IMG/VR virus record: IMGVR_UViG_3300025770_000870
Location: 177,919-241,918 of that record
DNA length: 64,000 nucleotides
Direction: 5' to 3' (one strand)
The notes under the pieces were generated by a model. The model saw nothing but the letters and a program-made list of their open reading frames with translations. It had not been told where the DNA came from and did no database searches. Positions 17,324 through 53,715 of the stretch are shown here, piece after piece. The translations under genes and the position numbers were made by a program. Within the stretch, counting starts at the first letter, position 1, and the number at the start of each line of letters is the position of its first letter.

Positions 17324-17355
17324 AAACCTCTTAAAATTAATTAAGAGGTTTTTTT
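17324..17355. terminator. bidirectional intrinsic terminator
   Basis: AAACCTCTTAA...TTAAGAGGTTTTTTT between convergent genes. Confidence 0.8.
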
Positions 17356-17809
17356 ATGCCGCAGTTTTTGGGTCGGGTATATCAAAGTAAAATTGTGTTA
17401 CGCTATTACAACTTGGAAGTTTCATTTGTTTAACTTCTAGTAAACACCCCGATTCTAATATGTTTTTTAATTCTTTACCTTTTGGTGTATCTAGAACTTT
17501 TAATACTATTTTTAACTCATCCACTTTATTATTCGTTATGATAAAAGACATTGACCTAACAAAAAATGATATACTTTTTAATAATATATCAGAATATTCT
17601 GGTTTTCCTAAACTACCATATACCGGACTATTTATTTTTGATATTTCGGTTACGTCAAATCCAATCCTTTTACCTTCGTTTAATAAAACATTAAGTTTTA
17701 TCTCACGTTTATATTGTATCCATTGTGGAAATTTAGTTAGTAATCGATCATAGTTATTTAACTCAACATCATTTCCTAAAACAACATTATATTCTAGTAA
17801 ATCATCCAT
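17354..17809 (-). CDS. degenerate prohead-protease (gp21) paralog with REIKLNVLL motif
   Basis: VYGSLGKP and LKVLDTPKGKELKNILESGC align with VYGEFDHP and IKLLSTYWGKEAKALVDDGC of the 20295 protein. Confidence 0.6.
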   Translation of the reverse strand: MDDLLEYNVVLGNDVELNNYDRLLTKFPQWIQYKREIKLNVLLNEGKRIGFDVTEISKINSPVYGSLGKPEYSDILLKSISFFVRSMSFIITNNKVDELKIVLKVLDTPKGKELKNILESGCLLEVKQMKLPSCNSVTQFYFDIPDPKTAA

Positions 17810-19713
17810 TACATTTTTATGAAATCTATTTGTTTCTTTTCTAAATCAACACCATTAACTATGATAGTTATCTCATCACCTAATCTGATTCTATCCCCAA
17901 CATCATTAAAGATTTGATAGTTTTGTGTGTCTATATTATAATTACCTTCTAAAGATTGGTATCTTATCATACCCTCACATTTACTTTCTGTTAATTCAAC
18001 ATATAATCCCCAATCAGTTACACCAGAAACTATCCCAGTGAATACTTTCCCAATTTTATCTAAAAGATATTCGGCTTGTTTGTATTTTATAGAATCTCTT
18101 TGGGCTCTGGATGCTATCAATTCTCTACTTGAACACCATTTAGCCTCATCTTCAACTTTAGTAGGGTTTCCTTGTTTCTTATTATGTAAGAAATCAAGTA
18201 ACATTCTATGTGTCATTAAATCCGGATACCTACGTATTGGACTTGTGAAGTGTGAATAGTGTGTGAATCCTAATCCATAATGTCCTATGTTTTGTATTGT
18301 GTATGTTGCTTTAGACATACATCTAGTTACAACCGTACTTAACATATTTTCTTCTGGTGTTCCTTTAACATCTTGTAATAACTTGTTTATAGATTTTTTA
18401 AGATCTTCAGATTCGCCTTCTATTTTGAATTCGTGACCAAAAGTCTTACACACATTTGATAATGCTGTTAACTTCTCCATATTAGGAGTATCATGTACTC
18501 TAAATACATTAGTTCTCGAATTACTTGATAATAGTTTAGCAACAGATTTATTAGCTAGTAACATAAATTCTTCAATTAATTTATTAGCTTCTTTCTGTTC
18601 TTTGAAATAAACACCAATTGGTTTCTTATTATCCTCTGCTAATTCGAATCGAACTTCCACACCACCCATCTCTAATGAACCGTCTTTAATTCTTTTCTTT
18701 CTTATTTTCTTAGCTAATGTGTTTAGATGATTAATCATCAATGGATAAACACTACCATCACCTGTGTATTTTTCATCATTACCCTCGATTATCTCTTGAG
18801 CATCCTCATAAGCAAATCTCATATCAGAATGTATGACTGTTTTACCGTGCCATTCTTTAACAATTTTACCATCCGAGTCTAGTGTAAATACAACTGAAAA
18901 TGCTAACCTATCTTCATTAGGTTTTAATGAACATATTCCATTACTAAGTCTTTCTGGTAACATAGATACACATCTATCAACTAGATACACAGATGTTGCT
19001 CTTTCATAAGCTTCATCATCTAATTTAGTACCAGGTTTAACATAGTGTCCAACATCAGCAATATGTACTCCTACTTCAAATCTATTATCATTCATTACTT
19101 TAAGTGATAATGCGTCATCAAAATCACGAGCATCTACTGGGTCGATTGTTATTGTTGTTGTATCTCTCATATCTCTACGAGATTTTATTTCCTTTTCGGT
19201 TATTACTTCTGGTGTGAGTTCTGATTCGTTTATAACATCTTGTGGAAAATCAACTGGTAATCCATATTCATACATTATCGAATTCATCTCAGCGTTATTA
19301 TCACCAACATCTCCTAATATCTTAGTTATCTTAGCTTGTGGGGATTTACTATCTACCCACTTTGTGAGTTCGACTATAACCTTTTGGTTATCTTCCGATT
19401 TTAATCCACCCTTGATATAGAAATCAACTGGTATTCTTTTATTATCTGCTATAACAAATGTTGATTTACCATTAATATGTACCTTACCAACGAATTCTTT
19501 CTTATTCCTTGATATTGTGTTAATTACTTTAGCTTCTAATTTCCTATCACCCCTAAATACTTCTACAATTACTTTATCTAAGTGTAAAGCATTTTTAGTA
19601 TTCTTCTTATAAATGAAAATTGATTTATCGTTTATTGTGATTGTTGCGTGTCTGTTTGTTGAGAACTCTATTTGACCTTCGTAACGTTCTCCTTCTTTTA
19701 TATTATTATTCAT
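17809..19713 (-). CDS. rnr: ribonuclease R (RNB family 3'-5' exoribonuclease)
   Basis: TIDPVDARDFDDALS, VHIADV, HFTSPIRRYPD, C-terminal S1 domain; likely start MNNNIKEG at 19713. Confidence 0.95.
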   Translation of the reverse strand: MNNNIKEGERYEGQIEFSTNRHATITINDKSIFIYKKNTKNALHLDKVIVEVFRGDRKLEAKVINTISRNKKEFVGKVHINGKSTFVIADNKRIPVDFYIKGGLKSEDNQKVIVELTKWVDSKSPQAKITKILGDVGDNNAEMNSIMYEYGLPVDFPQDVINESELTPEVITEKEIKSRRDMRDTTTITIDPVDARDFDDALSLKVMNDNRFEVGVHIADVGHYVKPGTKLDDEAYERATSVYLVDRCVSMLPERLSNGICSLKPNEDRLAFSVVFTLDSDGKIVKEWHGKTVIHSDMRFAYEDAQEIIEGNDEKYTGDGSVYPLMINHLNTLAKKIRKKRIKDGSLEMGGVEVRFELAEDNKKPIGVYFKEQKEANKLIEEFMLLANKSVAKLLSSNSRTNVFRVHDTPNMEKLTALSNVCKTFGHEFKIEGESEDLKKSINKLLQDVKGTPEENMLSTVVTRCMSKATYTIQNIGHYGLGFTHYSHFTSPIRRYPDLMTHRMLLDFLHNKKQGNPTKVEDEAKWCSSRELIASRAQRDSIKYKQAEYLLDKIGKVFTGIVSGVTDWGLYVELTESKCEGMIRYQSLEGNYNIDTQNYQIFNDVGDRIRLGDEITIIVNGVDLEKKQIDFIKM

Positions 19714-19723
19714 ATTCCTTTTA

Positions 19724-20137
19724 TTAGGAAATATCGTTTTGTTTATTATCGCGTTTGGATATGTTGTCAACACCGTACTTATCTATAAGTGTTTTTTTCA
19801 TTTTTTTCAATATTTTATTGTTTTGTATTGGATAGTCAACACCGTAATTTTCTCTTAATGATTTTTTCCTTTTTGATTCTGAGCATTTTCTACAAGAGTA
19901 TTCACCCCAGTTATTATCATATTTAATATAGTTCTTGAATATTACATCCTTTTCGATTCCACATTTATCACACTTACACTTTATTTTATAGTGGGATCCT
20001 TTGGATAGTAATTCAACTGGTATTATTAATAATTCACCAATTGTAACATCACTATATCCTAGATTTTCATAGTATGAATAGTTTGCTTCGCTTATTTTAA
20101 CTTTTATCTCTCTAGTTATTATCATAAAAAACCTCAA
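19724..20137 (-). CDS. zinc-ribbon protein with KYGV repeats (homing-endonuclease-like DNA-binding remnant)
   Basis: CKCDKC...CRKC followed by NYGVDYP and KYGVDNI repeats; no nuclease motif seen. Confidence 0.5.
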   Translation of the reverse strand: MRFFMIITREIKVKISEANYSYYENLGYSDVTIGELLIIPVELLSKGSHYKIKCKCDKCGIEKDVIFKNYIKYDNNWGEYSCRKCSESKRKKSLRENYGVDYPIQNNKILKKMKKTLIDKYGVDNISKRDNKQNDIS

Positions 20138-20215
20138 AATTTTAATTATTTATTAAATATGTGTTGTCCTCTTCCCGTACTCACCAAACCTTCTTTAATA
20201 AAAGATTATAGAGCC

Positions 20216-20294: not shown

Positions 20295-22436
20295 ATGAAA
20301 CCGGTTTTAATAGTAGAAAATTCACAAAACCAACTTATTAGAGAGAGTAACTCTGCTAATAAGGGGTACACATTAGGTGGTACATTCACCGAATTCGGTG
20401 TCAAGAACAGAAATGAACGTATTTATTCGGCTGATAAATTTTTACCAGCATTGAATGAAATGAATGAACGTATAAGTGGCTTAGGTGCTGTTTATGGTGA
20501 ATTCGATCATCCAGACGTTTTTGACACATCACTCTCAAGAGCCTCGCATATTATCACAAAGGCAAGTTATATCCAAGAGAAAAATATCGTAGCGGGAGAG
20601 ATTAAATTACTAAGTACTTACTGGGGTAAGGAAGCAAAAGCACTTGTCGATGACGGGTGTCCTGTATTCGTTTCTTCAAGAGCTGCTGGTATTACTGAAT
20701 CTGATGGTTCAGTTTCCCTTAAAAAATTATTTACTTATGACATTGTTGCTGACCCAGGATTTGCGTCAGCTAAAATGGATGTTAAGGTACTTAATGAGTC
20801 ATTGGGATATAATGACGAAAAATCTAACTTTAGGATATATGAAATGTCCGATGAGTCAAAAATAAATGAGTTATTCAATATGAACAAAAATGAGTTTGTA
20901 ACAAAAAAACAATTGACTGACTACTCTAACTACTTAGTTAACGAATTAGCATCAACTAAGAAGACAGTTAATACAGCCATTACTAAAGGTAATGTAGCTC
21001 CAAAGAAATTGGAACAATTATTAGAGTATTATGAAGAGTTAAACAACTCTAATTCAAAAGTAGCTAAGTATCTTGATTATTTATCAGAAAAGGTACAAAT
21101 AGTAGTTAATGAGAATAAATCATTAAAGAAGACAACTGAGAAATTAGTTAAACATAATGATTATTTAGCAGAAAACTTAGAGAAATCTATTAATTACGCT
21201 GAGTATTTAGGTGAAAACTTAGATAAGAACATTGATTATTCTGAGTATTTAGCTGAGAATTTAGACAAGAACATATCTTATGCTGAGTATTTAGCTGAGA
21301 ATGTTGATAAAAACATTTCATATTCTGAGTATTTAGCTGAGAGTTTAGATAAGAACATTGCTTATTCTGAATATATCGCTGAGAATTTAGACAAAAACAT
21401 CGCTTATTCTGAGTATATCGCTGAGAATTTAGACAAAAACATTGCTTACTCTGAGTATATCGCAGAAAACGTTGATAATAATATCGCTTATTCTGAATAC
21501 TTATCTGAGCATGTTGAAGGTAACATTGCTTACTCTGAGTATATCGCAGAACATTTAGATGATAACATCGCTTATTCTGAGTATGTAGCAGAGAATCTTG
21601 ACAAATCAATTAATTATCAAGGATTGATAGTTGAGAGATTAAACGGAGATAAATTATTTGAATCTGTTGAAGGATCTGAAAGCTTCCCATCTCTAGACGA
21701 TGCTGGTTTTGAAGCTTTTGATGATGAAGAAAACAAAGATGAAGAAAATTGTAATCTTGAAGTATCATTAGATAATAATGATGAAGAAAATGGTGTTGAA
21801 GAATCTGTTGAGAATACAGATGATTACGCAACAGAAGAAAACAAAGATGAAGAAAATAAAGATGAAGAAAACAAAGAAGATAAAACTGAAAGCCATGATA
21901 TGGTAAACGGTGATAGTGATTCTGAATTATCTGAATCTATTGATAAACTAATTGAAGAAGCTAAAAAACGAAAAGTTTCTGAAACAACAGATGTGAATTT
22001 CTTGAAGTTCATGTCTAAATCACAAGTTGACAGCTTTTACGCTTTGTCAAATGACGAACAAGAGTCAGTTAAAGTCCATATAAACGAAAGAGACTACTTT
22101 ACTCAAAAAGATGTTTTGTTATTGATATCTGAAGCACTATCAACTAAGAACGAATCTCTTGAAGAGAGAATAATCAGATTGATGCCTGAAAACACAAAGC
22201 CAATCTGGGAACAATTAAACGACACTTCTAAGAAATCTATCTTGTCACAAGCTAGATTATATCCAGAAGACGTTTTAACTACTGAGGCACAAGTTGAACA
22301 TTTTTGGTCAACTAGAAAGCTAAAGACAAATGAGTCTGTAACAAAGAAACTTGTATCACATGAAAGCCTTATCCAAGAAGATAAACTTTCAGATAATGAT
22401 GTTCAAGCGATAATGGAAAGATTCAAAAATATTTAA
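20295..22436 (+). CDS. prohead protease (gp21-like) fused to a scaffold/core domain
   Basis: KNRNERIY, YGEFDHP, SHII, VSSRAAG, DIVADPG; then 14-aa repeats and an acidic region. Confidence 0.9.
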   Translation: MKPVLIVENSQNQLIRESNSANKGYTLGGTFTEFGVKNRNERIYSADKFLPALNEMNERISGLGAVYGEFDHPDVFDTSLSRASHIITKASYIQEKNIVAGEIKLLSTYWGKEAKALVDDGCPVFVSSRAAGITESDGSVSLKKLFTYDIVADPGFASAKMDVKVLNESLGYNDEKSNFRIYEMSDESKINELFNMNKNEFVTKKQLTDYSNYLVNELASTKKTVNTAITKGNVAPKKLEQLLEYYEELNNSNSKVAKYLDYLSEKVQIVVNENKSLKKTTEKLVKHNDYLAENLEKSINYAEYLGENLDKNIDYSEYLAENLDKNISYAEYLAENVDKNISYSEYLAESLDKNIAYSEYIAENLDKNIAYSEYIAENLDKNIAYSEYIAENVDNNIAYSEYLSEHVEGNIAYSEYIAEHLDDNIAYSEYVAENLDKSINYQGLIVERLNGDKLFESVEGSESFPSLDDAGFEAFDDEENKDEENCNLEVSLDNNDEENGVEESVENTDDYATEENKDEENKDEENKEDKTESHDMVNGDSDSELSESIDKLIEEAKKRKVSETTDVNFLKFMSKSQVDSFYALSNDEQESVKVHINERDYFTQKDVLLLISEALSTKNESLEERIIRLMPENTKPIWEQLNDTSKKSILSQARLYPEDVLTTEAQVEHFWSTRKLKTNESVTKKLVSHESLIQEDKLSDNDVQAIMERFKNI
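21174..21635 (+). repeat. 11 x 42-bp in-frame tandem repeat (NLDKNIAYSEYIAE consensus)
   Basis: units counted in the translation from NLEKSINYAEYLGE to NLDKSINYQGLIVE. Confidence 0.9.
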
Positions 22437-22438
22437 TG

Positions 22439-22521: not shown

Positions 22522-24252
22522 ATGTCACACATTAGAATAGACAAACAAAAAGCTATGAAGAAATGGTCTCCAGTATTAGAGAACATGGGAGTTGCTGGTG
22601 AAGATAGATTGGATTGGATGTCAGAATATGCTGAATTTCACTCAATCAATGAAAACGCTTACGCAAACGCTTCAAACGTATCGGGTATGGGAGCTGTAGT
22701 AGCTGCACAACCTAATTCATTAGCTGGTAACACAATTGGCAATTACGCTGACTCAACTGGTTCAGGTGATGTTGGTCAAAACCTTTTACCGGTAGCGATG
22801 AAAATAGCAGCTCAAACAATCGGTTTAGATTTAGTAGCTGTTAAACCTTCTCCAGGTCCAAAAATTGATTTATTATATATCGACTTTAGATATGATGATG
22901 CTCATTTAGGAGATTCAGACGAAAGACCACAAGTCTTTAAGATTGCACCAAACGCTACATTTTTAACTACTGGTGCTGGTGGTATGACAGCAGTTATCGC
23001 TGGATTAAGAGCTCAATTAGCTACGAATACAATCACTGAAACAGTTGGTGGTTTAACTGGTAGAATGTGGAATGATATCACAGATGGTTCAGATGTAGTT
23101 GTAGAACCAACACCTTCAAAAGAAGGAAAAGTTGAATTTTTAGGATTCTCTAGAATTGATGGTTATCCAATGTTCAGAGCTTACAGACAGATGAATACAT
23201 CTCACACAGATGTTGGTTCAGCTCAAGCAAACTGGGGATTTGACCCGACTAGAAACACATTTAGTCCTACAATGTCAATGGCTTCTCAAATTACTGATTT
23301 AGGAGATGTTACTTTAACTGATGAGCCTACTATTGAATTAGTATCAGCTCTTGAAGATCACATTCCTGGTTTCTCTGCAAACTGGATGTCGGATGCTACT
23401 GGCCCTGCTGGTAACTATCCAATGGATAGAGAAATGGACGATAAAAGATACTCTGGTATCATCGGACCAAAAATTAGTTCTAAAACAGTTGCCGTAGGTA
23501 CTATTGAAGTATCTTCAGCTCTTAGAAGAACTGAAATTGAAGATATCAAAGCTAACACTGGTATGGATATCGTTCAAAAAATGGAGTCAATTCTTGTTAA
23601 TGAATTATCTCAAACAATCTCTAAGCAAATTGTTGCTAAGATATTTGAAATGGGTTCACTTAACAGATTATCTGCACCAGCTTATGTTGGAACAGCACCG
23701 GCACCATTAGCGGGACAAACAATCTTTGACTTAAACACAGCTTATGCAACTGTTGCTGCTGGTAATGGAAACGTTGGTGGTGAAACTACACACGCTGTTC
23801 AAAGAAAGCTTGTAACTAAGATAGCTCACGCTTCTAACTACATCGCTACAGAGGGACGTGTTGGTCCAGCTCAATACCTTATTACAAATGGGGGATTAGC
23901 AGCAGCACTTTCTGATATCTCTGGTTATACAATTAACCCAGTGAAATCAAAAATCAATGGTCAAGGTCAATTATACCCAGTAGGTTCAATTGGAGATATT
24001 TCAATATATGTTGATCCATATATGAGATATAACGACAATAGAATTGCTCTTGGTAGAAAGAACAATCCAGATCAACCAGGTATTATTTTTGTACCTTACT
24101 TAATGGCTCAGTCTATATCTGTAATTTCTGAAGCGACTTTCGCTCCTAGAATGTTACTAAGATCTAGATACGCTGTAACAGAAGTTGGTTGGTTCCCACA
24201 AAAACAATTTATGACTATCGAAGTTACAGATGTGAATACACTTCTTAACTAA
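22522..24252 (+). CDS. major capsid protein (T4 gp23-like)
   Basis: KKWSPVLE start, QTIGLDLVAVKP, IFVPY, TFAPRMLLRSRYAV; lies downstream of protease/scaffold. Confidence 0.92.
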   Translation: MSHIRIDKQKAMKKWSPVLENMGVAGEDRLDWMSEYAEFHSINENAYANASNVSGMGAVVAAQPNSLAGNTIGNYADSTGSGDVGQNLLPVAMKIAAQTIGLDLVAVKPSPGPKIDLLYIDFRYDDAHLGDSDERPQVFKIAPNATFLTTGAGGMTAVIAGLRAQLATNTITETVGGLTGRMWNDITDGSDVVVEPTPSKEGKVEFLGFSRIDGYPMFRAYRQMNTSHTDVGSAQANWGFDPTRNTFSPTMSMASQITDLGDVTLTDEPTIELVSALEDHIPGFSANWMSDATGPAGNYPMDREMDDKRYSGIIGPKISSKTVAVGTIEVSSALRRTEIEDIKANTGMDIVQKMESILVNELSQTISKQIVAKIFEMGSLNRLSAPAYVGTAPAPLAGQTIFDLNTAYATVAAGNGNVGGETTHAVQRKLVTKIAHASNYIATEGRVGPAQYLITNGGLAAALSDISGYTINPVKSKINGQGQLYPVGSIGDISIYVDPYMRYNDNRIALGRKNNPDQPGIIFVPYLMAQSISVISEATFAPRMLLRSRYAVTEVGWFPQKQFMTIEVTDVNTLLN

Positions 24253-24273: not shown

Positions 24274-24301
24274 AAAAAAGACTCCTTGTGGGTCTTTTTT
24301 C
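24274..24301 (+). terminator. intrinsic terminator after capsid gene
   Basis: AAAAAGAC(T)-loop-(G)GTCTTTTTT. Confidence 0.65.
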
Positions 24302-24326
24302 TTTTTAAATAATTTATATATACACT

Positions 24327-24716
24327 ATGATTAAAAAGTATAATTATTTCTTTGAGTCTAAGAAGACTAAGTTCCCTAATATTAAGAAAGTTGAAGTAGA
24401 AGGATTCTTTATTCATATAGGTAGAGACTCCAAATCTAACGACCACTTAACATTTAACGTTGCTGATGATAAAGACATCTGGATGCACGCTAAGGGTGTT
24501 CCTGGGAGTCATGTTATTATAAGAGTTAGAGAAAACTTACCAACTCAAGAAATACTAAGATATGTTGCTGAATTAGCTAAAAAGAATAGTAAAGCTAGTA
24601 AAGAAGATAATGTAACTGTTGTTTATTGCCAAAGAAAATTTGTTAAGAAAGAAAGTGGTATGAATGAGGGTCAAGTAAGAGTTGATTATATCAATGCCTA
24701 CGAAATCGTAGTTTGA
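24327..24716 (+). CDS. standalone NFACT-R (DUF814, RqcH/FbpA C-terminal RNA-binding) domain protein
   Basis: IGRDSKSNDHLT, DIWMHAKGVPGSHVII, VVYCQRKFVKK; CTS-like start MIKKYNYFFES. Confidence 0.9.
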   Translation: MIKKYNYFFESKKTKFPNIKKVEVEGFFIHIGRDSKSNDHLTFNVADDKDIWMHAKGVPGSHVIIRVRENLPTQEILRYVAELAKKNSKASKEDNVTVVYCQRKFVKKESGMNEGQVRVDYINAYEIVV

Positions 24717-24753
24717 TATTTAATATATAAGATTAATAAAATAAATTTTTATA

Positions 24754-26109: not shown

Positions 26110-26110
26110 T

Positions 26111-26605: not shown

Positions 26606-26675
26606 CTATAAACAATCCATTTTAACAACTTTTAAATATTTTAGTATATTATATATACATTAATTACAAACACTT

Positions 26676-27052: not shown

Positions 27053-27087
27053 CAAGAGCCGATTGAATACTTTCAATTGGATTTTTT

Positions 27088-27120
27088 AACCTCACTTCCT
27101 ACATGGGAGTGAGGTTTTTT
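27088..27120 (+). terminator. intrinsic terminator after tmRNA
   Basis: AACCTCACTTCC-tacat-GGGAGTGAGGTT plus T-run. Confidence 0.85.
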
Positions 27121-27755: not shown

Positions 27756-28727
27756 ATGTCTGTTATTAGCTATTTTGGTGGCAAGTCCTCAAAGGTCTTC
27801 CATCAGTTCATCAACACAAGAATACCAAAAGATGGTATCAAAACTTATGTAGAACCATTCTCAGGTGCAATGGGAACGTATATGGATGACCCAAATCTTA
27901 AATTCGATACAGTTGTTTATAATGATAAGAACCGCCACCAGGTGAACTTATATAAGTGTTGTCAAAATCCAACAGAAATGTTGATACATATAGATAATCT
28001 AAAGAGTGGTTTATTACACACAACAGAAACGGATCCAATAAAAAATTGGGATTTTTATAAAGCTATTTATAAGACATTTCAAAAGAATGATTTCTTAGAT
28101 GATATGGATTTTGAGATTGGGGATTATGAAAAAGCTGCTATGTATGCTTTCTTAATTACATCAGCTCATAATTCAGTTTATCCAAGAGGAGCAGGGTTTA
28201 ATGGTTATAAGAAGAATAATGGCAAACTTAAAATAGAAGCACTTGTTAATAAACTAAAGAAGGGTAAGTACACAGAGAAATTGGAATCAATTACTGAGTT
28301 CTATAATATTGATTTTGAGGAATTGATAAACAAATATGATTCAGTAGATACATTTCTTTACTTAGACCCACCTTACGCTAGATTTGACGAGGCTAAAGGA
28401 ATGGATGATGCTAGGAGACTATTCTGGTATGGATGTGATGATGAAGGTGTCTTTGGACCCGAATCACATAGAAGGTTATTAGAAATGCTTAAAAAGACTG
28501 ATTGTAGATGGTCATTATCTTATTATTACTTTCCTTTATTAGAAGAATTATTACCAAGAGACCAATATAACTGGGTTGAGAAAGAAGTATTTAGAAGTTC
28601 TGCTCATGGTGGTAACAATTCGGATAATAAAAAGGTACAAGCTAAAGGTGTTGAGATGCTTATTATGAATTATAATCCAGAAACGGGAGAAAAAATCACT
28701 AATAAGGATGTCGAATGTGAACTTTAA
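27756..28727 (+). CDS. DNA adenine methyltransferase (Dam/D12 class)
   Basis: YFGGKS, YVEPFSGA, YNDKN, LYLDPPY. Confidence 0.9.
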   Translation: MSVISYFGGKSSKVFHQFINTRIPKDGIKTYVEPFSGAMGTYMDDPNLKFDTVVYNDKNRHQVNLYKCCQNPTEMLIHIDNLKSGLLHTTETDPIKNWDFYKAIYKTFQKNDFLDDMDFEIGDYEKAAMYAFLITSAHNSVYPRGAGFNGYKKNNGKLKIEALVNKLKKGKYTEKLESITEFYNIDFEELINKYDSVDTFLYLDPPYARFDEAKGMDDARRLFWYGCDDEGVFGPESHRRLLEMLKKTDCRWSLSYYYFPLLEELLPRDQYNWVEKEVFRSSAHGGNNSDNKKVQAKGVEMLIMNYNPETGEKITNKDVECEL

Positions 28728-29460
28728 GATTGTTGATATTTTCGAGAGTGTTAAGGATGATATTTTTTCAATTCAACCATATTTATCTATTAATAATAAT
28801 CTAAAAAATTTCACTACTAATACATTTAGTTTATCAATTCCGATGGAATTGGATGGGTTTGGTGTTGATACTGATGCTGAGATGATAAGTCTTATTAGGA
28901 TTGAGATGAATCAAAGTATTTATAAAACAATTTTGAAAGAATTATTCAATACTTCAAAATTTGATTATATAGATATTTCTAAAACTGTTAATACTCACCA
29001 ATCTGTTAATGATATTATTGATTTTTTATCTATTGATTGTATAGATAAAAAATATAAGTATTTAGTTACGAATACTTCTATGGCTAATTCAATAGGTGAT
29101 AGTTCATTATTTAACTTTAAACCAAGTGCATCGGTTGTAGAATCTCAAGGTTTACCATATTTATTTGGGTCTTTGATTAAATATGATGTTTATATAGATC
29201 CTTTTATGAAATTTGATGATAATAGAATTTGCTTATTTGATTCTTGTGAGATTAATATAGAGAATATAAATCAAACTGTTACATCAGCGGCCACATTTGC
29301 ACCTAAGATGATGATAAGTTATGATGTGGCTTTTAAAATAGCAGACTCTAAGGTTATATTTGTTTTAGATGGTAATGAATCAAGTAGTTCTTATAAGCAA
29401 TATAAACAATTACAGCGTGATATAAAAATAAATTCTTTATTAGATGGCTCAACAGATTAA
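28708..29460 (+). CDS. truncated major-capsid paralog with C-terminal RDIKINSLL motif
   Basis: YDVYIDPFMKFDDNRICL and AATFAPKMMI align with ISIYVDPYMRYNDNRIAL and EATFAPRMLL of the 22522 capsid. Confidence 0.75.
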   Translation: MSNVNFKIVDIFESVKDDIFSIQPYLSINNNLKNFTTNTFSLSIPMELDGFGVDTDAEMISLIRIEMNQSIYKTILKELFNTSKFDYIDISKTVNTHQSVNDIIDFLSIDCIDKKYKYLVTNTSMANSIGDSSLFNFKPSASVVESQGLPYLFGSLIKYDVYIDPFMKFDDNRICLFDSCEINIENINQTVTSAATFAPKMMISYDVAFKIADSKVIFVLDGNESSSSYKQYKQLQRDIKINSLLDGSTD

Positions 29461-29665
29461 TAATACATTCCAGGTGAATTCGGCTTCTAATAAAAATGCT
29501 ATTGTGGTTGATCCAGATGGATACACAACTATTGATAAATTAATACTTGTTGATCAAAAAGATGGAACTAAGTGGGATTTTTCAATTTATGATGGTGAGG
29601 TATTAGTTGAGCCACATGGTAAATCAGAAAAAAGAGAATATAGAATCAATAAGGTTATTTCTTAA
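29444..29665 (+). CDS. small protein, tail-fibre-like fragment with REYRINKVI motif
   Basis: LILVDQKDGTKWDFSIYDGEVLV resembles a fibre beta-hairpin motif; shared C-terminal motif. Confidence 0.5.
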   Translation: MAQQINNTFQVNSASNKNAIVVDPDGYTTIDKLILVDQKDGTKWDFSIYDGEVLVEPHGKSEKREYRINKVIS

Positions 29666-44423: not shown

Positions 44424-45752
44424 ATGAGCAAGTTAGTAACATTAAACGGGTTAAATGATGAAGAAATATTAAATGATATATTCATCGATGAGATAATTGT
44501 CCTTGAAGATATACAGGGAAGTAAAATATGGGTTAATTGGGATGGTAAGCATTTTAATATCAAACCTAAATCTATATCAAATGAGTCAATAAATCTAATT
44601 GACTTAGCAATGCAAAATTATTATAATCCGGCTATCAATTATTTAAATTCATTAGATGATAGAACAAAAAGCCTTTTAAATAAAAAATGGTGGTTTTGTT
44701 TCGAGTATTTTCCTGATGAGCAACCTGCTAATATAGAGTATAATAGAGTTCCTAAGAATAATCTTGTTCTTACAGCTATTTCTAAGTCTAGAAAATATGA
44801 ATTTACTATTGAAGAGTTAGATGAGTATTCTAGATTATTTAATGTTGATGTGGTGCCGGTTATATATCAAGGTACTTTGACCGAAAGTATGAAAGAAGCG
44901 ATAAAGTATTTTATTAATACTAGTGAGGATGATTTAGAGTATATTTTTGGTGAAAAGTCATTTGCATTCTTCTTTTATGGAATATTAAACCCATCAGTTA
45001 ATAACTCTTTCTTAATGGATAATGAATTCCAAAATAATGTTGAGAAACTTATTATTAAGAGTAAAACAAAGGATATTTCATTTCAGTTATTAAATCCTTT
45101 ATATAAAAGGTTGAGTGATGATAATCATACAGACTTTGTTGAGATTTATACATTAATATTAATTAATTTCTTGAATTTTTCTCAATCTATTAATTTAGAA
45201 GATATTAAATTGAAAGGTGATAGAAAAGATGAAGTTTACATATATTTAGTTTCTAAAATATTCAATGTTTATATATCGGAGGTCAAACAAGATTTACTTG
45301 ACTTTGACTTTGTTGTTCCTGAATTCTTTGATAAGGATAAATTTAAGATAAATATTGAATTGATTAGTAATAAATTAACAAAGGATTATATAAAAGAGAG
45401 TGATAAATTAGAATATATTTTTAAGGTTATTCTTGGATCTTTCAACAAGAAAAGAAAGAAACCAATTGGTATATTCACTGAGAATACAGTTAAGTTATTT
45501 AATAAATTTGTAGTTGATATCGATGATTATATCGATACTTATTTAGGAAAACTACATGAAATTGAATTAGGTAGATCTGGTCTACTAGATTTCGGTGACT
45601 TCTTTGATATTCAATATGATACTGATGGAGAGGGTGAAGTTTATCCAGATGTTTACTCAGAGTTTTCTAAGACTGGTGGTCAGAACAAGAAGAAGAAAAA
45701 AGGTAAGGGTGGTAAATTCCCAATTGATCCAGGTAAAATTCCATTTAAATAA
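44424..45752 (+). CDS. RNA-ligase-fold protein lacking the catalytic Lys
   Basis: LEDIQGSK in place of EKxDGxN, FCFEYF (motif III-like), VVPVIYQG. Confidence 0.5.
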   Translation: MSKLVTLNGLNDEEILNDIFIDEIIVLEDIQGSKIWVNWDGKHFNIKPKSISNESINLIDLAMQNYYNPAINYLNSLDDRTKSLLNKKWWFCFEYFPDEQPANIEYNRVPKNNLVLTAISKSRKYEFTIEELDEYSRLFNVDVVPVIYQGTLTESMKEAIKYFINTSEDDLEYIFGEKSFAFFFYGILNPSVNNSFLMDNEFQNNVEKLIIKSKTKDISFQLLNPLYKRLSDDNHTDFVEIYTLILINFLNFSQSINLEDIKLKGDRKDEVYIYLVSKIFNVYISEVKQDLLDFDFVVPEFFDKDKFKINIELISNKLTKDYIKESDKLEYIFKVILGSFNKKRKKPIGIFTENTVKLFNKFVVDIDDYIDTYLGKLHEIELGRSGLLDFGDFFDIQYDTDGEGEVYPDVYSEFSKTGGQNKKKKKGKGGKFPIDPGKIPFK

Positions 45753-45943
45753 TGATTGATATTAAAATGACCTCTGTCGAGGTAAAGGCCGAAGTACGCG
45801 AACTAAAATGTAAATATACTCGTGAAATGGCTAAGGATATACACTATTATAGTGGTTTAGATCCTTTTAGTATGGATAATAGAAGAACAACAAGAAAAGA
45901 TTCGATTAATAATATTTTTAATATAACAAAACATGATAAATAA
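45752..45943 (+). CDS. 63-aa gp23-capsid-like fragment with RKDSINNIF motif
   Basis: SVEVKAEVRELKCKYTREMAKDIHYYSGLD resembles the gp23 block V.AKSR.LKAEYT.ELAQDL.A.HG.D. Confidence 0.6.
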   Translation: MIDIKMTSVEVKAEVRELKCKYTREMAKDIHYYSGLDPFSMDNRRTTRKDSINNIFNITKHDK

Positions 45944-47382: not shown

Positions 47383-47922
47383 GTGATTGATTTAACTAAC
47401 CCCAAAATATCATATATTGTGATATCATCTGAAAAGATTGATGATATTATGTCAATTTTGTATGCTAAAAATTATCAAATTATACCGATAAAGGGTTATT
47501 ATCAAGGTCAATATGAGGATTCATTGATGGCTTTTGGTGTTGATAATGATGAGTTAAGAAAAGATTTGATTTTTTTACTTAACCATTTTAGAGAGGATTG
47601 TGGTATAGTTAAATACTTTGGTGAGACCGGTGCTAAGAAAGTGTTCAAAGACGGCTCAGAGAAGCCCTTAGGTATCGTATTGTATAATACAGACTCAGAT
47701 AACATTTCATATTTATATGATGGTATATCGTTCTCTTTTGTTGAACAAGTTAGATATTGGAAACCTAAGAATAAAGAAGATTTTTCTGTTGGTATGTTAG
47801 TTGAATATATGAATAATAATAAGTGGTATGAAAAGGAAGTTATTAATCCATCAGAAGAATACCATAAGCTATATAAGCTTATGATAAAGTATGATAAGAT
47901 TAGAGTAGCTACTACTAACTAA
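47383..47922 (+). CDS. hypothetical protein (possible SAM-lyase/DUF3293-like fold)
   Basis: KGYYQGQYEDSLMAF...FREDCGIV pattern. Confidence 0.4.
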   Translation: MIDLTNPKISYIVISSEKIDDIMSILYAKNYQIIPIKGYYQGQYEDSLMAFGVDNDELRKDLIFLLNHFREDCGIVKYFGETGAKKVFKDGSEKPLGIVLYNTDSDNISYLYDGISFSFVEQVRYWKPKNKEDFSVGMLVEYMNNNKWYEKEVINPSEEYHKLYKLMIKYDKIRVATTN

Positions 47923-48718
47923 TCTCAAACCAAACAATTCGATTCTCGAATGTTGGTGTTTCTTTTATAAAATAAGTTTGATAATTATCTCCGTTATTAA
48001 CATTGTTAACAACATTTAATCCTGTACATCTCTCACCTTTTGGTCTTACTCCGATTACTTTACTTGGATTTATTTTACTTGAGTGTATTACTTGAGCCCC
48101 ATTTATATTACCTATGATGTCATCATAATTATTTGATAAATTAAAATTATATGATGTTGATAATAAGTATTCTACTATATTATCTCCTATAATAAATGCG
48201 GTAGCGGGACCTAAGTTACTTTTCATAGATAAAACATTACTAATAAATGTCATCTTTGTGATTATTCTTCTGGAATCAGCATCTGATTGTTCATTTGTTG
48301 TTAAAAATTTATCATTTTTTAATTTAAGAGTTACGTCTGTGTAAAATTTACATTTTTTCATTGGTTTACTTGTTAAAGTATCCAATGTTGATATAATATC
48401 ATTATATAATAATGCTTCACTTATGAATTTTTTAGCAGTTACATTTTGCGACATCATTCTTGTTGAGAATGTTCCAATTGTATCCAACCCATCATAAATA
48501 CCTTGCGGTAACCAATCCATATCATCATATTCTTCTTGTTTTTCAGCAAGAACAGAATTTATAGATGATTGTCTATGTCTTCTTTTGAGTTCATTCATTA
48601 TCCACTCATCATCAGATGATAAAGTATCCGTATAATAAATAACACCCTTGGGTAAAGAGGGTTTATTATTTTCTGTGTAATTACATATCAATTTTATATT
48701 AGACAGCAAGGTGCTCAT
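47915..48718 (-). CDS. degenerate major-capsid paralog fragment with RHRQSSINSVL motif
   Basis: RRIITKMTFISNVLSMKSNLGPATAFII aligns with capsid RKLVTKIAHASNYIATEGRVGPAQYLIT. Confidence 0.6.
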   Translation of the reverse strand: MSTLLSNIKLICNYTENNKPSLPKGVIYYTDTLSSDDEWIMNELKRRHRQSSINSVLAEKQEEYDDMDWLPQGIYDGLDTIGTFSTRMMSQNVTAKKFISEALLYNDIISTLDTLTSKPMKKCKFYTDVTLKLKNDKFLTTNEQSDADSRRIITKMTFISNVLSMKSNLGPATAFIIGDNIVEYLLSTSYNFNLSNNYDDIIGNINGAQVIHSSKINPSKVIGVRPKGERCTGLNVVNNVNNGDNYQTYFIKETPTFENRIVWFEIS

Positions 48719-49571: not shown

Positions 49572-49976
49572 ATGGATAAAAAAGTAGGAAGATTTGAAAA
49601 AATATTTTTTCCTGAACTAAATATAAAAGTGGATTCTAAAATAGACACTGGTGCTTATAGCGTTTCTTTACACGTTGAGGATATCAACGAAGTGGATGGT
49701 AAATTATACTTCTGGGTTGGTGATGAATCTAATAAATTCATATATGATGATTTTAATATTATTAGTGTTAAGAGTTCTTTTGGTAAAAATCAAAAAAGAT
49801 ATTCTATAAAATTGAAGATGCATCTGGGTAAACTTACCTATGATGTTTTCGTATCACTGAGTGATAGAAAAAAAATGAAGTTTCCTTGTTTGATAGGTAG
49901 AAAATTTCTACATAAACACGGATTTTTGGTAGATGTGAGAAAAAAGAATTTACATGATAGAAATAAAAAAATGTAA
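49572..49976 (+). CDS. RimK-associated putative ATP-dependent zinc/aspartic protease
   Basis: SKIDTGAYSVSLH and LSDRKKMKFPCLIGRKFL. Confidence 0.88.
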   Translation: MDKKVGRFEKIFFPELNIKVDSKIDTGAYSVSLHVEDINEVDGKLYFWVGDESNKFIYDDFNIISVKSSFGKNQKRYSIKLKMHLGKLTYDVFVSLSDRKKMKFPCLIGRKFLHKHGFLVDVRKKNLHDRNKKM

Positions 49977-50493
49977 TTATTTTACTGGTGATAATAGCAT
50001 CTCTGATGGTATTAAAGATATTGTTAATTTTTTAGAATTATCAGGCAGAAATTATTTGCTATTAACTCCACCTAAAAATAGTGACATTGATAAATCAACA
50101 CAAACAAATACAATAAAATATTATTTGGATAATCAATTACACTTTAATAACTTTGTTGAGTTTGTTGATATTATAGAAAATGAAGGCAATTTATTTAGGG
50201 TTGATTTGTTGGTTTTGGATTTTTGGCATTTAACACCTATTGAGATATCTATTTGGAAAAAAGAAATTGATAAATTGGGATTAGACCATTTGATAATAGC
50301 TAAAGAATATCACTATAAATCTACTGATGATGTTACAGACTATCATCTTAGAAGAGAGTATAAAACGGTTGGTAAAAATGAATTATTTATAACTGATAAT
50401 ATAAATAAATGGACATCAACTTTAGAATCTTTAATAAAATCTTATAGAAGAGATAAGAAAATCAATGATATATTTGGTGGAACTGATAATTAG
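49954..50493 (+). CDS. degenerate RecA/DnaB-like fold protein with RDKKINDIF motif
   Basis: Walker-B-like VDLLVLD without an intact Walker A; shared C-terminal motif. Confidence 0.5.
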   Translation: MIEIKKCNYFTGDNSISDGIKDIVNFLELSGRNYLLLTPPKNSDIDKSTQTNTIKYYLDNQLHFNNFVEFVDIIENEGNLFRVDLLVLDFWHLTPIEISIWKKEIDKLGLDHLIIAKEYHYKSTDDVTDYHLRREYKTVGKNELFITDNINKWTSTLESLIKSYRRDKKINDIFGGTDN

Positions 50494-52285: not shown

Positions 52286-52287
52286 AA

Positions 52288-52695
52288 TTAAATTAAAAAT
52301 ATATATATGAACACTTGTAAAGAAACACCAAATAAAACCATTGGTGTTTTCTTTTTATCTTGTTCTGAAGGTGGTAAATGCACATGTGTCTCTGTTATTG
52401 AATTTTTATCCAATTTTTTAATTGTTTGTTCAAATATTATTCTATGAAAATACTTGAACATAAAAATTTGTGCTATTATAAATGGTATTGATACCCATCC
52501 AATTGTATATGTTAATAATGTCCCAGTCGTTAATAACACTAAAAATCTTTGAATATTGAATATTTTTTTAGCACAAAATTCAGAACTCCTTTTATTTTTA
52601 CTCTTGATATGTTCAAAAAAACCTTCCCGTAAACCTTCCGACATAGAATAAAGTATCCAGATTAAGTTTGTTATTGTTATTGCTATAAAATCCAT
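52288..52695 (-). CDS. membrane protein
   Basis: three to four hydrophobic segments. Confidence 0.65.
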   Translation of the reverse strand: MDFIAITITNLIWILYSMSEGLREGFFEHIKSKNKRSSEFCAKKIFNIQRFLVLLTTGTLLTYTIGWVSIPFIIAQIFMFKYFHRIIFEQTIKKLDKNSITETHVHLPPSEQDKKKTPMVLFGVSLQVFIYIFLI

Positions 52696-52750
52696 ACTTA
52701 TAAACTTCTGCTTTTTTGTATATATTAAATATAATAACTATATTTGTTGT

Positions 52751-53209
52751 ATGTTTGAAATAAAAGGTAAAATAGTATTCGATCCAATCGATAAAACTAA
52801 GAAGCACTCTAAGCAGTCTTCCTGGAAGAAAGTCGTTATGATCGAGTTCAAGGATGATACTTGGTCTTACTATTCTTGGTTTTTAAAAAAAAGATTTGGA
52901 CTAGTCTTGAATAAACCACTTCGAGGAACCCACTTTACTATTATTAACGATATTGTTGATGATGTAATATACAAACAAGCTAAGAAAATGTTTGATGGTA
53001 CTGAAATAACAATTCAATACGATCCAACAAATATACGTTCTAATGATAAAGGTCACTGGTGGATAAAGGCTTATTCTGATGATGCTATAAATATAAGAAG
53101 TGTTATGGGATTGGGTGATCCTTATTTCGGTTTCCACATTACTATGGGATTAGCTACTAACACACAATTAGAACACTCTAAATATATTAAACAATATTTG
53201 AGATTGTAA
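52751..53209 (+). CDS. 2H-phosphoesterase-fold protein
   Basis: two Hx[T/S]h motifs, THFTI and FHITM, about 70 aa apart. Confidence 0.6.
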   Translation: MFEIKGKIVFDPIDKTKKHSKQSSWKKVVMIEFKDDTWSYYSWFLKKRFGLVLNKPLRGTHFTIINDIVDDVIYKQAKKMFDGTEITIQYDPTNIRSNDKGHWWIKAYSDDAINIRSVMGLGDPYFGFHITMGLATNTQLEHSKYIKQYLRL

Positions 53210-53238
53210 ACTAAAATAATAATACCACTATAATCTAT

Positions 53239-53715
53239 GTGGTTAATAATCTAAGAAATATAATTATTGGTGATACCAATGTAGGAAAATCTACTTATTT
53301 GTATCAAATAGCAAACACATTAAATAAATGTGGGTATTCGGTATGCCTTATTGATGGTGATGGGTCTGGTATATCAAACCCTATTGATAATGATGTTATA
53401 AACCTTGTGAATAAGAATGATGTTAGGTTATTTAAGATGGTAAATAATATTGATGATATTGATGTTATTTTAATTGATGATATTGGATATTTATCTTCTG
53501 AGTGTATATCTGAGGTTTCTGATAGTAAAAAGGTTATTATATCAATTTGTTTCAAGGACTGGGGATCCAAACTGAATAAGTTTGTTGAAAAAAGTGAAAT
53601 ATTTAAATTGACTAAGACAACAATTGAGTATAATAATTCTATTATAGATAGAAATGGATATTTATTACAATCAATAAGAGAAACAAAACTAAAATACTTA
53701 TTAAATGAAAAATAG
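53239..53715 (+). CDS. miniature P-loop NTPase (RecA/DnaB-like) with RETKLKYLL motif
   Basis: GDTNVGKST Walker A, VILIDD Walker B, only 158 aa. Confidence 0.6.
   Translation: MVNNLRNIIIGDTNVGKSTYLYQIANTLNKCGYSVCLIDGDGSGISNPIDNDVINLVNKNDVRLFKMVNNIDDIDVILIDDIGYLSSECISEVSDSKKVIISICFKDWGSKLNKFVEKSEIFKLTKTTIEYNNSIIDRNGYLLQSIRETKLKYLLNEK

What the first reader, a model, noticed from the sequence alone, without database searches (positions are those of the whole stretch)
17354..53715. Family of broken copies of essential phage proteins sharing an R-[DE]-x-K-I-N-x-L tag: candidate decoy system
Seen in sequence: seven dispersed small ORFs carry the same short helical motif: YKREIKLNVLL (17354), LQRDIKINSLL (28708), EKREYRINKVI (29444), TTRKDSINNIF (45752), RRHRQSSINSVL (47915), YRRDKKINDIF (49954) and SIRETKLKYLL (53239). 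The rest of each ORF looks like a truncated or inactivated copy of a core protein: three major-capsid pieces, a prohead protease without its His, two P-loop remnants and a fibre-like piece. They lie in apparently non-structural operons (several behind AAACT-N16/17-TATAAY promoters), away from their intact counterparts. Established knowledge: several bacterial defences sense conserved phage proteins (Avs NLR-like proteins detect terminase and portal; CapRel and Lit respond to capsid). Inference: these could be decoys or sponges for such sensors, or dominant-negative assembly regulators, with the shared motif acting as a docking, oligomerisation or degradation tag.
Basis: partly seen in the sequence, partly recalled or inferred. 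Interest (0 to 1): 0.92.

Follow-up and report, generated by a model that had tools for sequence, protein, structure and literature searches.

The report
Proteome-wide C-terminal tag in huge phage
The shared motif is real, but it is not a mark of broken capsid genes: it is a short helical tag on the tail end of about one in ten proteins of this huge marine phage and its relatives, most likely an address label that brings many unrelated small proteins to one common partner.

Summary
All seven motif strings exist. The motif is far above chance: the strict pattern gives 4 hits against 0 in 500 shuffles. It is the best-conserved patch in orthologues that are only 30-70% identical, and it is selected at the protein level, not the DNA level.

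Several carriers do derive from core proteins:
- ORF 28708 is a compact HK97-fold paralogue of the major capsid protein.
- ORF 17354 is a prohead-protease paralogue without the catalytic His and Ser.
- ORF 49954 has a RecA-like core without a P-loop.
- ORFs 45752 and 47915 are only weakly capsid-like.
- ORF 53239 is an intact small P-loop protein, not a remnant.

The tag is not specific to such copies. In the complete 635-kb relative LR745206, 83-124 of 984 ORFs carry it. These are unrelated, small, acidic, fast-evolving proteins, and the tag almost always ends 0-7 residues before the stop. Small ORFs with a larger paralogue are tagged no more often than other small ORFs (17% vs 14%). Two other AT-rich huge phages lack the tag.

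I read it as a clade-specific docking peptide for one common receptor. My favoured role is targeting into the prohead, as the T4 capsid targeting sequence does. A degron or adaptor for a phage-encoded ClpC/ClpP is the close rival. The decoy idea is untested and does not explain most carriers.

The parts
17354..17809 (-). Tagged ORF of 151 aa. It is a paralogue of the prohead-protease domain without the catalytic His and Ser. The tag YKREIKLNVLLNE is N-proximal (DNA 17681-17713).
   Evidence: hhalign vs the protease family gives 93%, E=2.6e-7, residues 60-138 against 63-141. GEFDHP and SSRAAG are not conserved. All 32 family members show a tag-like K-R-[DE]-x-x-[LI]-x-x-[LIV]-L peptide at residues 9-49; 29 of them score at least 10 bits.
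28708..29460 (+). Tagged ORF of 250 aa. It is a compact HK97-fold paralogue of the major capsid protein. The tag LQRDIKINSLLDG is C-terminal (DNA 29410-29442).
   Evidence: hhalign vs the capsid family gives 99.5%, E=1.5e-22. The AF2 model has pLDDT 84.8, with the tag inside helix 227-245. Foldseek finds phage capsids, encapsulins and T4 gp23 at E~1e-6. Pfam Gp23 scores only 15.6 bits, below the cut-off.
29444..29665 (+). Tagged ORF of 73 aa, a small beta-rich protein of unknown fold. The tag EKREYRINKVIS is C-terminal (DNA 29627-29659).
   Evidence: Orthologues at 36-74% identity keep the tag. There are only faint fibre-like leads.
45752..45943 (+). Tagged ORF of 63 aa, with a possible copy of the capsid-protein E-loop segment. 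The tag TTRKDSINNIF is near the C-terminus (DNA 45887-45919).
   Evidence: Pfam Gp23 gives E=1e-4 (22.1 bits, below the 24.4 cut-off). hhalign vs the capsid family is not significant. The orthologue keeps RKESINKIF.
47915..48718 (-). Tagged ORF of 267 aa, probably capsid-like. The tag RRHRQSSINSVLAE is N-proximal (DNA 48548-48583).
   Evidence: hhalign vs the capsid family gives E=3e-4, 38%. The structural neighbours in the atlas are all capsid families, but the model is poor. The tag is conserved in two orthologues.
49954..50493 (+). Tagged ORF of 179 aa, with a RecA/RadA/KaiC-like core lacking Walker A. The tag YRRDKKINDIFGG is C-terminal (DNA 50443-50475).
   Evidence: The AF2 model has pLDDT 81.7. 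Foldseek top hits are RadA, KaiC and RecA at E~1e-5. All 120 homologues listed keep SYIRDKKIDxLF-type tails; 108 reach the PSSM cut-off.
53239..53715 (+). Tagged ORF of 158 aa, a small P-loop NTPase with Walker A and B. The tag SIRETKLKYLLNEK is C-terminal (DNA 53671-53703). It lies just upstream of thymidylate synthase.
   Evidence: Pfam and PHROG give sub-threshold P-loop hits. The orthologue tail reads KRELKLNTLLDEE. A distant match to a UvsX-like protein of LR745206 gives E=1.5e-4.
15609..17306 (+). Intact T4-type portal gene (context only, untagged).
   Evidence: Pfam Portal_T4 E=2e-56.
20295..22436 (+). Intact prohead protease fused to a scaffold that carries about twelve 14-residue repeats. 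It is the counterpart of ORF 17354 and is untagged.
   Evidence: PHROG head maturation protease E=1.6e-30; Pfam S77 is weak. Sequence.
22522..24252 (+). Intact gp23-type major capsid protein. It is the counterpart of ORF 28708 and is untagged.
   Evidence: Pfam Gp23 E=2.7e-26. Sequence.
58822..60606 (+). DinG/XPD-like helicase with an internal tag-like peptide, DKRDLKLSKLF, at residue 285.
   Evidence: PSSM 12.7 bits, and 18.3 bits in the LR745206 orthologue. Pfam helicase domains.

Best explanation
Shown. The seven ORFs carry one instance each of a clade-wide short linear motif.
- Consensus: K-[SQ]-x-[LI]-R-[DE]-x-K-[IL]-[ND]-x-[IL]-[LF]-[DNG].
- It is predicted helical and is tethered to the end of otherwise unrelated proteins.
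- In about 80% of carriers it ends 0-7 residues before the stop. In a few it is N-proximal or internal.
- About 8-12% of all ORFs carry it. These are small, acidic, fast-evolving proteins, mostly without any known family.
- Paralogues of capsid, scaffold, protease, polymerase and RecA-type proteins are among the carriers, but they are not enriched.

Inferred. One face of the helix (invariant Arg, Lys, then three hydrophobic residues at i, i+3, i+4) docks onto a single common receptor. Any polypeptide that acquires the tag is therefore delivered to the same place.

Most likely use (about 0.3-0.35). The tag acts as a capsid-targeting signal like the T4 CTS. It would bind the protease-scaffold core or the inner capsid surface of this T4-type head. 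A large, diversifying set of accessory proteins would then be packed into the prohead and delivered with the DNA. The general claim, a functional docking tag for a common partner, I hold at about 0.9.
For: Reality and selection of the tag:
- 74 hits at 14 bits or more against 1.1 in shuffles.
- codon usage at the motif equals genome usage.
- the motif is conserved in orthologues.

Clade specificity:
- Present in LR745206, LR756502 and IMG/VR relatives.
- Absent from 42 kb of Lak-B6, 50 kb of PTm1 and 42 kb of LR756508.

Modular tag on unrelated proteins:
- carriers unrelated to each other; no known families.

Position and structure:
- Position near the stop.
- Helix after a linker.

Fast evolution:
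- Median 56% identity vs 76-80% for untagged ORFs, p=7e-4.

Precedent for diverse proteins sharing only a targeting peptide:
- T4 IPII and IPIII start MKTYQEFIAE, with the same h-x-x-h-h-x-E pattern.

Link to a T4-type head:
- The head module here is T4-type: portal, S77 protease-scaffold and gp23.
- The two N-proximal tags are followed by L-x-E, the T4 protease site type (LNE in ORF 17354, LAE in ORF 47915).
- L-x-E ending at +10 is 16-fold enriched.
Against: - No receptor was identified and there are no virion data.
- Roughly 100 cargo species would be unprecedented.
- Carriers are acidic (median pI 5.1). T4 internal proteins are basic (my recollection, not checked here).
- Carriers are about 2.3-fold under-represented in operons behind the AATATATA element that precedes the portal, capsid and terminase genes: 6.5% vs 15%, p=0.007.
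- There is no protease-site motif between cargo and C-terminal tag.
- There is no sequence homology to the T4 CTS.
- Carriers include RecA-like and P-loop proteins that sit in nucleotide-metabolism operons.
- The relative encodes ClpC/ClpP, and the window encodes a tmRNA. Both fit a proteolysis-tag reading equally well.
Confidence: 0.33

Rival explanations
1. Degron or adaptor tag. The tag is recognised by a phage-encoded Clp machine (an N-domain-less ClpC-like unfoldase plus two ClpP), either directly or through an adaptor. Tagged proteins, mostly early accessory proteins, would be cleared on schedule. Alternatively they would carry whatever they bind to the protease.
For: - LR745206 encodes two ClpP (E<1e-53) and a ClpC-like ATPase with a VGF ClpP-binding loop. 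LR756502 has the ATPase at 82% identity, and no Lak phage record showed among the matches listed.
- A tagged ORF sits 20 nt upstream of the ClpC-like gene, and another lies next to ClpP2.
- The window encodes an abundantly transcribed, conserved tmRNA-like RNA. The phage therefore already uses C-terminal tagging.
- The tags are mostly C-terminal.
- Carriers are enriched in operons that lack the late-type promoter element.
Against: - The tail after the tag varies from 0 to 7+ residues, and about 20% of tags are internal or N-proximal. That is unlike classical terminal degrons.
- Another huge phage with a ClpC-like gene has no tag in 42 kb.
- The tag bears no resemblance to the tmRNA-encoded peptide.
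- No Clp genes lie in the window.
- Nothing shows instability of the carriers.
Confidence: 0.25
2. The tagged, inactivated copies of capsid, protease, scaffold, polymerase and RecA-type proteins are decoys or dominant-negative subunits. They would act against host sensors or competing phages, and the tag would supply docking or disposal.
For: - Real inactive or partial paralogues exist.
- They evolve much faster than the intact genes: 23-58% identity against 69-89%.
- The protease copy lacks its catalytic residues.
Against: - The tag is not enriched on paralogous fragments.
- Some capsid fragments lack it (g93266, g554784).
- About 95% of carriers show no relation to core proteins.
- No defence-related family was tested or found.
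- ORF 28708 is a complete compact HK97 fold rather than a broken piece.
Confidence: 0.1
3. Replisome or sliding-clamp docking peptide with PIP-box-like spacing, [DEQ]-x-x-[IL]-x-x-[IL]-[LF].
For: - The spacing matches PIP-type motifs.
- Two helicases carry internal tag-like peptides.
- ORF 49954's tail, INDIFGG, resembles the polymerase tail VVMDIFGG.
Against: - The split polymerase's C-terminus (VVMDIFGGFK) and the UvsX-like C-terminus (DAEDIFG) resemble the T4 gp43/gp55 tail SLDFL[FY]. They lack the tag's invariant Arg and Lys (PSSM below 5).
- The only weak gp55-like candidate has no tag.
- About 100 orphan carriers are hard to fit to a clamp.
Confidence: 0.07
4. Chance or composition artefact of a K/N/I-rich proteome, or a DNA element that happens to be translated.
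For: The genome is 30% GC and rich in K, I, N and L.
Against: - Shuffles give 0 of 500, and 1.1 against 74 observed.
- Two other AT-rich huge phages have none.
- There is a strong positional bias towards the C-terminus.
- Synonymous codons vary as in the rest of the genome.
- The motif is conserved across diverged orthologues.
Confidence: 0.01

Closest known systems
T4 capsid targeting sequence (CTS) of internal proteins IPI, IPII, IPIII and Alt
   Same: A short conserved peptide is the only thing shared by diverse, fast-evolving accessory proteins of a phage with a T4-type head (PMC3012670). Both have a hydrophobic i, i+3, i+4 pattern followed by x-E.
   Different: - The CTS is N-terminal, about 10 residues long, sits on a handful of proteins and is cut off by gp21.
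- Here the tag is mostly C-terminal and sits on about 100 proteins.
- It has invariant Arg and Lys and no sequence homology to the CTS.
- No cleavage site lies between cargo and tag.
- Encapsidation is not shown.
Encapsulin cargo-loading peptides, and the C-terminal coat-binding helices of scaffolding proteins and HK97-type proteases (my knowledge, not tested)
   Same: A short C-terminal peptide on a flexible linker docks on the inside of an HK97-fold shell.
   Different: - The consensus differs.
- The carriers are dispersed through the genome rather than placed next to the shell gene.
- Binding to the capsid protein is untested.
ssrA-type C-terminal degrons and Clp adaptor-binding peptides
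   Same: Both are C-terminal tags. The clade encodes a ClpC-like ATPase and ClpP, and the window encodes a tmRNA-like RNA.
   Different: - The tag is genome-encoded on about 10% of ORFs.
- It is helical, has variable tails and is sometimes internal.
- It has no similarity to AANDENYALAA-type tags or to this phage's own tmRNA frame.
T4 gp24 vertex protein (a paralogue of gp23)
   Same: ORF 28708 is a second HK97-fold paralogue of the major capsid protein, encoded near it.
   Different: ORF 28708 is half the size, lacks the N-terminal delta domain and the insertion domain, evolves three times faster than the capsid protein, and carries the tag.

Membership tests
T4-type capsid targeting sequence | A short peptide shared by otherwise unrelated, rapidly diverging proteins of one phage | tested here: met
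   122 of 123 carriers are unrelated to each other. Carriers diverge faster than other ORFs.
T4-type capsid targeting sequence | N-terminal position, ending in a prohead-protease site (L/I-x-E) | tested here: not met
   About 80% of tags are C-terminal, and no L/I-x-E lies upstream of them. Only the two N-proximal tags (ORFs 17354 and 47915) are followed by L-x-E.
T4-type capsid targeting sequence | Carriers are found inside the virion | not testable with these tools
   The phage is uncultured and no proteomics data are available.
Clp/ssrA-type degron | A cognate AAA+ protease is available | tested here: met
   A ClpC-like ATPase with a VGF loop and two ClpP are encoded in LR745206. None lies within the window.
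Clp/ssrA-type degron | The signal sits at the extreme terminus and destabilises its carrier | tested here: inconclusive
   Tails of 0-7 residues follow the tag, and about 20% of tags are internal. Stability is not testable here.
Sliding-clamp binding tail (T4 SLDFL[FY] / PIP-like) | Present at the C-terminus of the DNA polymerase and of clamp-dependent factors | tested here: not met
   The polymerase C-part ends in VVMDIFGGFK and the UvsX-like protein in DAEDIFG. Both are T4-like tails, not the tag. The gp55-like candidate has no tag.
gp23-family major capsid protein (ORF 28708) | HK97 fold and profile similarity to gp23-type capsid proteins | tested here: met
   hhalign E=1.5e-22. Foldseek finds capsids including T4 gp23. 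Pfam Gp23 itself is below the cut-off, 15.6 against 24.4 bits.
gp23-family major capsid protein (ORF 28708) | N-terminal delta domain / N-arm, and conservation typical of a shell subunit | tested here: not met
   The alignment covers only capsid-protein residues 345-550. Orthologues are 23-58% identical against 69-85% for the capsid protein.
S77 prohead protease (ORF 17354) | Catalytic His and Ser | tested here: not met
   GEFDHP aligns to GSLGKP, and SSRAAG aligns to VKQMK. Neither residue is conserved in the family.
RecA-superfamily ATPase (ORF 49954) | Walker A P-loop | tested here: not met
   The fold matches RadA, KaiC and RecA, but the loop after strand 1 reads TGDNSISDG, with no GK[ST].

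The most novel reading that the evidence does not exclude
A bait-and-dispose system on a proteome scale. Each of about 100 fast-evolving small proteins binds a different host or rival-phage target. Some do so by mimicking pieces of the capsid, scaffold, protease, polymerase or RecA-like proteins that defence sensors recognise. The common tag then hands the complex to the phage's own ClpC/ClpP, or sequesters it. That would be a bacterial-virus analogue of viral hijacking of degradation machinery.
Probability: 0.1. Interest if true: 0.95.

Novelty: new variant of a known kind. Interest (0 to 1): 0.8.

Why it matters
If one short peptide addresses about a tenth of a huge phage's proteome to a single receptor, it gives a handle on roughly 100 orphan genes per genome at once. 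Finding the receptor tells where they all go: the capsid interior, a protease or a compartment. The tag would also be a ready-made portable targeting signal for this widespread marine phage clade. It further shows that the apparent 'broken gene' family is two overlapping phenomena: many diverged paralogues of core proteins, and a general tag.

Tried and rejected
- Stop-codon recoding as the cause of 'broken' ORFs. The nearest relatives belong to a group where recoding occurs, but the standard code gives full coding density in the window and in LR745206. Treating TAG or TGA as sense adds little.
- A repeated DNA element, promoter or ribosome-site constraint at gene ends. Rejected because codons vary as in the rest of the genome, and the distance to the next gene varies.
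- A composition artefact. Rejected by shuffles and by two other AT-rich huge phages.
- One paralogous family. Rejected.
- The tag marks fragments of core proteins. No enrichment.
- A protease site between cargo and tag. Not found.
- The tag equals the clamp-binding tail. The polymerase and UvsX tails are of a different type.
- The tag equals the tmRNA-encoded peptide. No resemblance.
- ClpC presence predicts the tag. It does not in LR756508.
- Pfam and PHROG on 20 carriers and PDB sequence searches gave essentially nothing.
- Literature searches found no description of the motif.
- Promoter-class assignment is crude. The AAACT-N16/17-TATAAY class seen in the window is rare under my regex in LR745206.

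Full report
**What the window is.** The window is about 30% GC. Its nearest public records are the uncultured huge phages LR745206 (634,780 bp) and LR756502 (642,428 bp), at about 80% nucleotide identity and in synteny. The same capsid gene occurs on IMG/VR contigs of up to 483 kb. At least 14 marine or seawater DNA runs and six metatranscriptomes hold the sequence. More distant relatives by capsid protein are the Prevotella Lak phages (30%) and Tenacibaculum phage PTm1 (28%). The standard genetic code fits. Treating TAG or TGA as sense gains almost nothing, so the small ORFs are not artefacts of recoding.

**The observation.** All seven peptide strings are present. Five lie within 6-16 residues of the C-terminus of their ORF, and two lie near the N-terminus.
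- The slightly wider R[DE].[KR][IL]N.[LIV][LIF] fits four, against none in 500 shuffles.
- A position matrix built from the seven and their orthologues leaves a gap between them (22-31 bits) and the next window hit (12.7 bits).
- Codons differ between copies (CGT and AGA for Arg; ATA, ATT and ATC for Ile).
- Across 74 copies in LR745206, codon frequencies at motif positions equal genome usage. Selection therefore acts on the peptide.
- In orthologues only 30-70% identical, the motif is the best-kept patch.
- It is the top-scoring 9-residue window in the ORF 17354 (32 members), ORF 28708 (15 members) and ORF 29444 families.
- All 120 metagenomic homologues of ORF 49954 that were listed (45-100% identity) end in SYIRDKKIDxLF-type tails. 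Of these, 108 reach the matrix cut-off. The 12 below it that were printed read IRDKKIEHLF or IRDKKIEQIF.

**Are the carriers broken copies of core proteins?** Partly.
- The window holds a T4-type head module: portal (15609-17306), an S77 protease fused to a repeat-rich scaffold (20295-22436) and a gp23-type capsid protein (22522-24252).
- ORF 28708 is a true paralogue of the C-terminal 200 residues of the capsid protein (profile-profile 99.5%, E=1.5e-22).
  - Its model (pLDDT 84.8) is a complete compact HK97 fold. It matches phage capsids, encapsulins and T4 gp23.
  - It is a small second capsid-fold protein rather than a broken one.
- ORF 17354 aligns to the protease domain (93%, E=2.6e-7) with the His and Ser positions replaced throughout its family.
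- ORF 49954 models (pLDDT 81.7) as a RecA/RadA/KaiC-like core without a Walker A loop.
- ORF 53239 is a small P-loop protein with intact Walker motifs.
- ORFs 45752 and 47915 have only sub-threshold capsid signals.
- ORF 29444 has only faint fibre-like leads.
- Two carriers are not far from their counterparts. ORF 17354 lies 47 bases past the end of the portal gene, and ORF 28708 lies 4.5 kb past the capsid gene.

**The main result.** I rebuilt LR745206 from 14 fetched pieces and scanned its 984 ORFs.
- 124 ORFs score at least 11 bits, against 6.8 in shuffles. 74 score at least 14 bits, against 1.1.
- 83 ORFs have the tag within 12 residues of the stop. The tail after the last hydrophobic residue is 0-7 residues in about 80% of cases.
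- The consensus is K-[SQ]-x-[LI]-R-[DE]-x-K-[IL]-[ND]-x-[IL]-[LF]-[DNG], with Arg present in 73 of 74 copies.
- Carriers are spread evenly along the genome.
- They are unrelated to each other once the tag is masked (122 singletons of 123).
- They are small (median 118 aa) and acidic (median pI 5.1). Twenty of them gave essentially no Pfam or PHROG family.
- In the window, tagged ORFs are 56% identical to their LR745206 orthologues, against 76-80% for untagged ones (p=7e-4).
- The tag is also frequent in LR756502 (15 hits of at least 10 bits in 77 ORFs) and in 64 IMG/VR relatives (83 of 1,519 ORFs near the head module).
- It is absent from 42 kb of Lak-B6 (26% GC), 50 kb of PTm1 (31% GC) and 42 kb of LR756508.
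- It is therefore a clade-specific, proteome-wide tag.

**Relation between the tag and fragment paralogues.** LR745206 holds more small ORFs that copy pieces of core proteins.
- The capsid N-terminus (g291407) is tagged.
- Capsid residues 44-98 (g93266 and g554784) are untagged.
- A capsid C-terminal piece (g255010) carries a weak tag.
- Scaffold repeats (g460435) are tagged.
- A copy of polymerase motif A, DFASLYPSTQR (g83154), is tagged.
- A systematic test gives no enrichment. Of 788 ORFs of 270 aa or less, 29 have a larger paralogue. Five of those 29 are tagged, against 108 of the other 759 (p=0.59).
- That test sees only sequence-level paralogy. Untagged window ORFs were not examined with structure methods.
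- The 'family' is thus the overlap of two things: many diverged small paralogues, and a general tag.

**How the tag may work.** In both models the tag lies in a terminal helix after a linker.
- Confidence stays near 89 in ORF 28708 and falls from 85 to 48 in ORF 49954.
- On a helix, Arg0, Lys3, Ile4, Ile7 and Leu8 fall on one face. That is what a docking peptide looks like (inference).

*For targeting into the head:*
- T4 internal proteins are diverse defence proteins that share only a capsid targeting sequence, which puts them into the scaffolding core (PMC3012670).
- T4 IPII and IPIII start MKTYQEFIAE. This shares with the tag only the h-x-x-h-h-x-E pattern.
- This phage has a T4-type head.
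- The two N-proximal tags are followed by L-x-E, and L-x-E ending at +10 is 16-fold enriched.

*Against targeting into the head:*
- The number of carriers is very large.
- The carriers are acidic.
- No cleavage site lies between cargo and C-terminal tags.
- Carriers are under-represented in operons behind the AATATATA element that precedes the portal, capsid and terminase genes: 1 of 185 directly, and 6.5% vs 15% by operon, p=0.007.

*For a proteolysis tag:*
- LR745206 encodes two ClpP and an N-domain-less ClpC-like ATPase with a VGF loop. LR756502 has the ATPase as well.
- The window encodes a divergent tmRNA (see below).

*Against a proteolysis tag:*
- Tail lengths vary, and some tags are internal.
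- LR756508 has a ClpC-like gene but no tag in the 42 kb sampled.

*Clamp-binding reading (weak):*
- T4 gp43 and gp55 end in SLDFLFG and SLDFLYEAND.
- Here the split polymerase ends in VVMDIFGGFK and the UvsX-like protein in DAEDIFG.
- Those tails are of the T4 type and lack the tag's Arg and Lys.

I could not identify the receptor.

**Known or new.** Four literature searches and a text search of one recent preprint found nothing on such a motif in Lak-like or huge phages. The closest known kinds are the T4 CTS, encapsulin and scaffold C-terminal peptides, and Clp degrons. The tag fails at least one defining feature of each family that could be tested. I file it as a new variant of a targeting-peptide system, with its function unresolved.

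**Side finding.** I laid four metatranscriptomes on 24300-30200.
- They show one dominant RNA of about 370 nt at 26684-27061, in a gap without a credible ORF.
- Rfam gives a full-length but sub-threshold tmRNA match at 26676-27055 (8.8 bits). ARAGORN finds none.
- The 5' GGGGGUG pairs with the 3' CAUCUCC, with a G3-U pair.
- The stem covaries in 55 related loci (GGGGAAG with CUUCUCC; GGGGGUG with CACCUCC).
- An internal frame ending in TAA TAG is conserved as ...EV[AG][ST][KR]EDLVAAL....
- This is most likely a divergent phage tmRNA.

Noticed in passing
window 26676-27061 (+): An abundant RNA of about 370 nt appears in four marine metatranscriptomes. It is a divergent tmRNA candidate. The Rfam tmRNA match is full-length but scores only 8.8 bits, and ARAGORN is negative. 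The acceptor stem has a G3-U pair and covaries across 55 related loci. The internal frame ...ASKEDLVFALQNNLLNVGELVEA ends in tandem stops.
   Followed up: partly
window 56483-58021 (+); LR745206 130568-131992 (-): The family-B DNA polymerase is split. The window holds the exonuclease domain and motif A (512 aa). The part with motifs B and C lies about 100 kb away in the complete relative and ends in VVMDIFGGFK, a T4-like clamp-type tail. The UvsX-like protein ends in DAEDIFG.
   Followed up: partly
window 17354-20137 (-): A minus-strand cassette sits between the portal gene and the protease-scaffold gene of the head module. It holds an HNH-like gene, a full RNase II/R (RNB, CSD and S1 domains) and the tagged protease paralogue.
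   Followed up: no
window 20295-22436 (+): The prohead protease is fused to a scaffold with about twelve tandem 14-residue repeats (NIAYSEYIAENLDK) and an acidic stretch. A small tagged ORF in LR745206 (460435-460686) copies 3-4 of these repeats.
   Followed up: partly
window, upstream of 784, 15609, 22522, 31779, 39756(-), 44424 and many others: A T-rich run plus AATATATA or TATATATA lies about 12 or 26-39 nt before start codons of structural and many other genes, which suggests a late promoter. AAACT-N16/17-TATAAY precedes the polymerase, DnaB, Dam, NADAR and ORF 53239 genes. TAnnTTTG, which I recall as the Bacteroidota promoter type, precedes a few genes.
   Followed up: partly
LR745206 75119-75859 (-), 123556-124221 (-), 423224-425329 (+): The relative encodes two ClpP and a ClpC-like double-ring ATPase. 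The ATPase lacks the usual N-domain but has a VGF loop.
   Followed up: partly
window 24754-26109, 49572-49976, 50529-51611, 24327-24716, 27185-27661: Two paralogous peptidases (PHROG 4191), a retropepsin-like PF05618 protease, an NFACT-R RNA-binding domain protein and a NADAR protein lie between the head and replication genes.
   Followed up: no
window 31779-37646 (+) and 39756-43580 (-): Two giant ORFs (1955 and 1274 aa) have no Pfam match. The second lies in the window's most GC-rich stretch, 35.6%.
   Followed up: no
window 15185-15535 (+), 38528-38782 (-), 88-738 (-): These ORFs have weaker C-terminal tag-like tails (KKINEIIKHES, ESLNSIFDE, RKLNDLIK) that lack the Arg-Asp part. They may be degenerate tags.
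   Followed up: no
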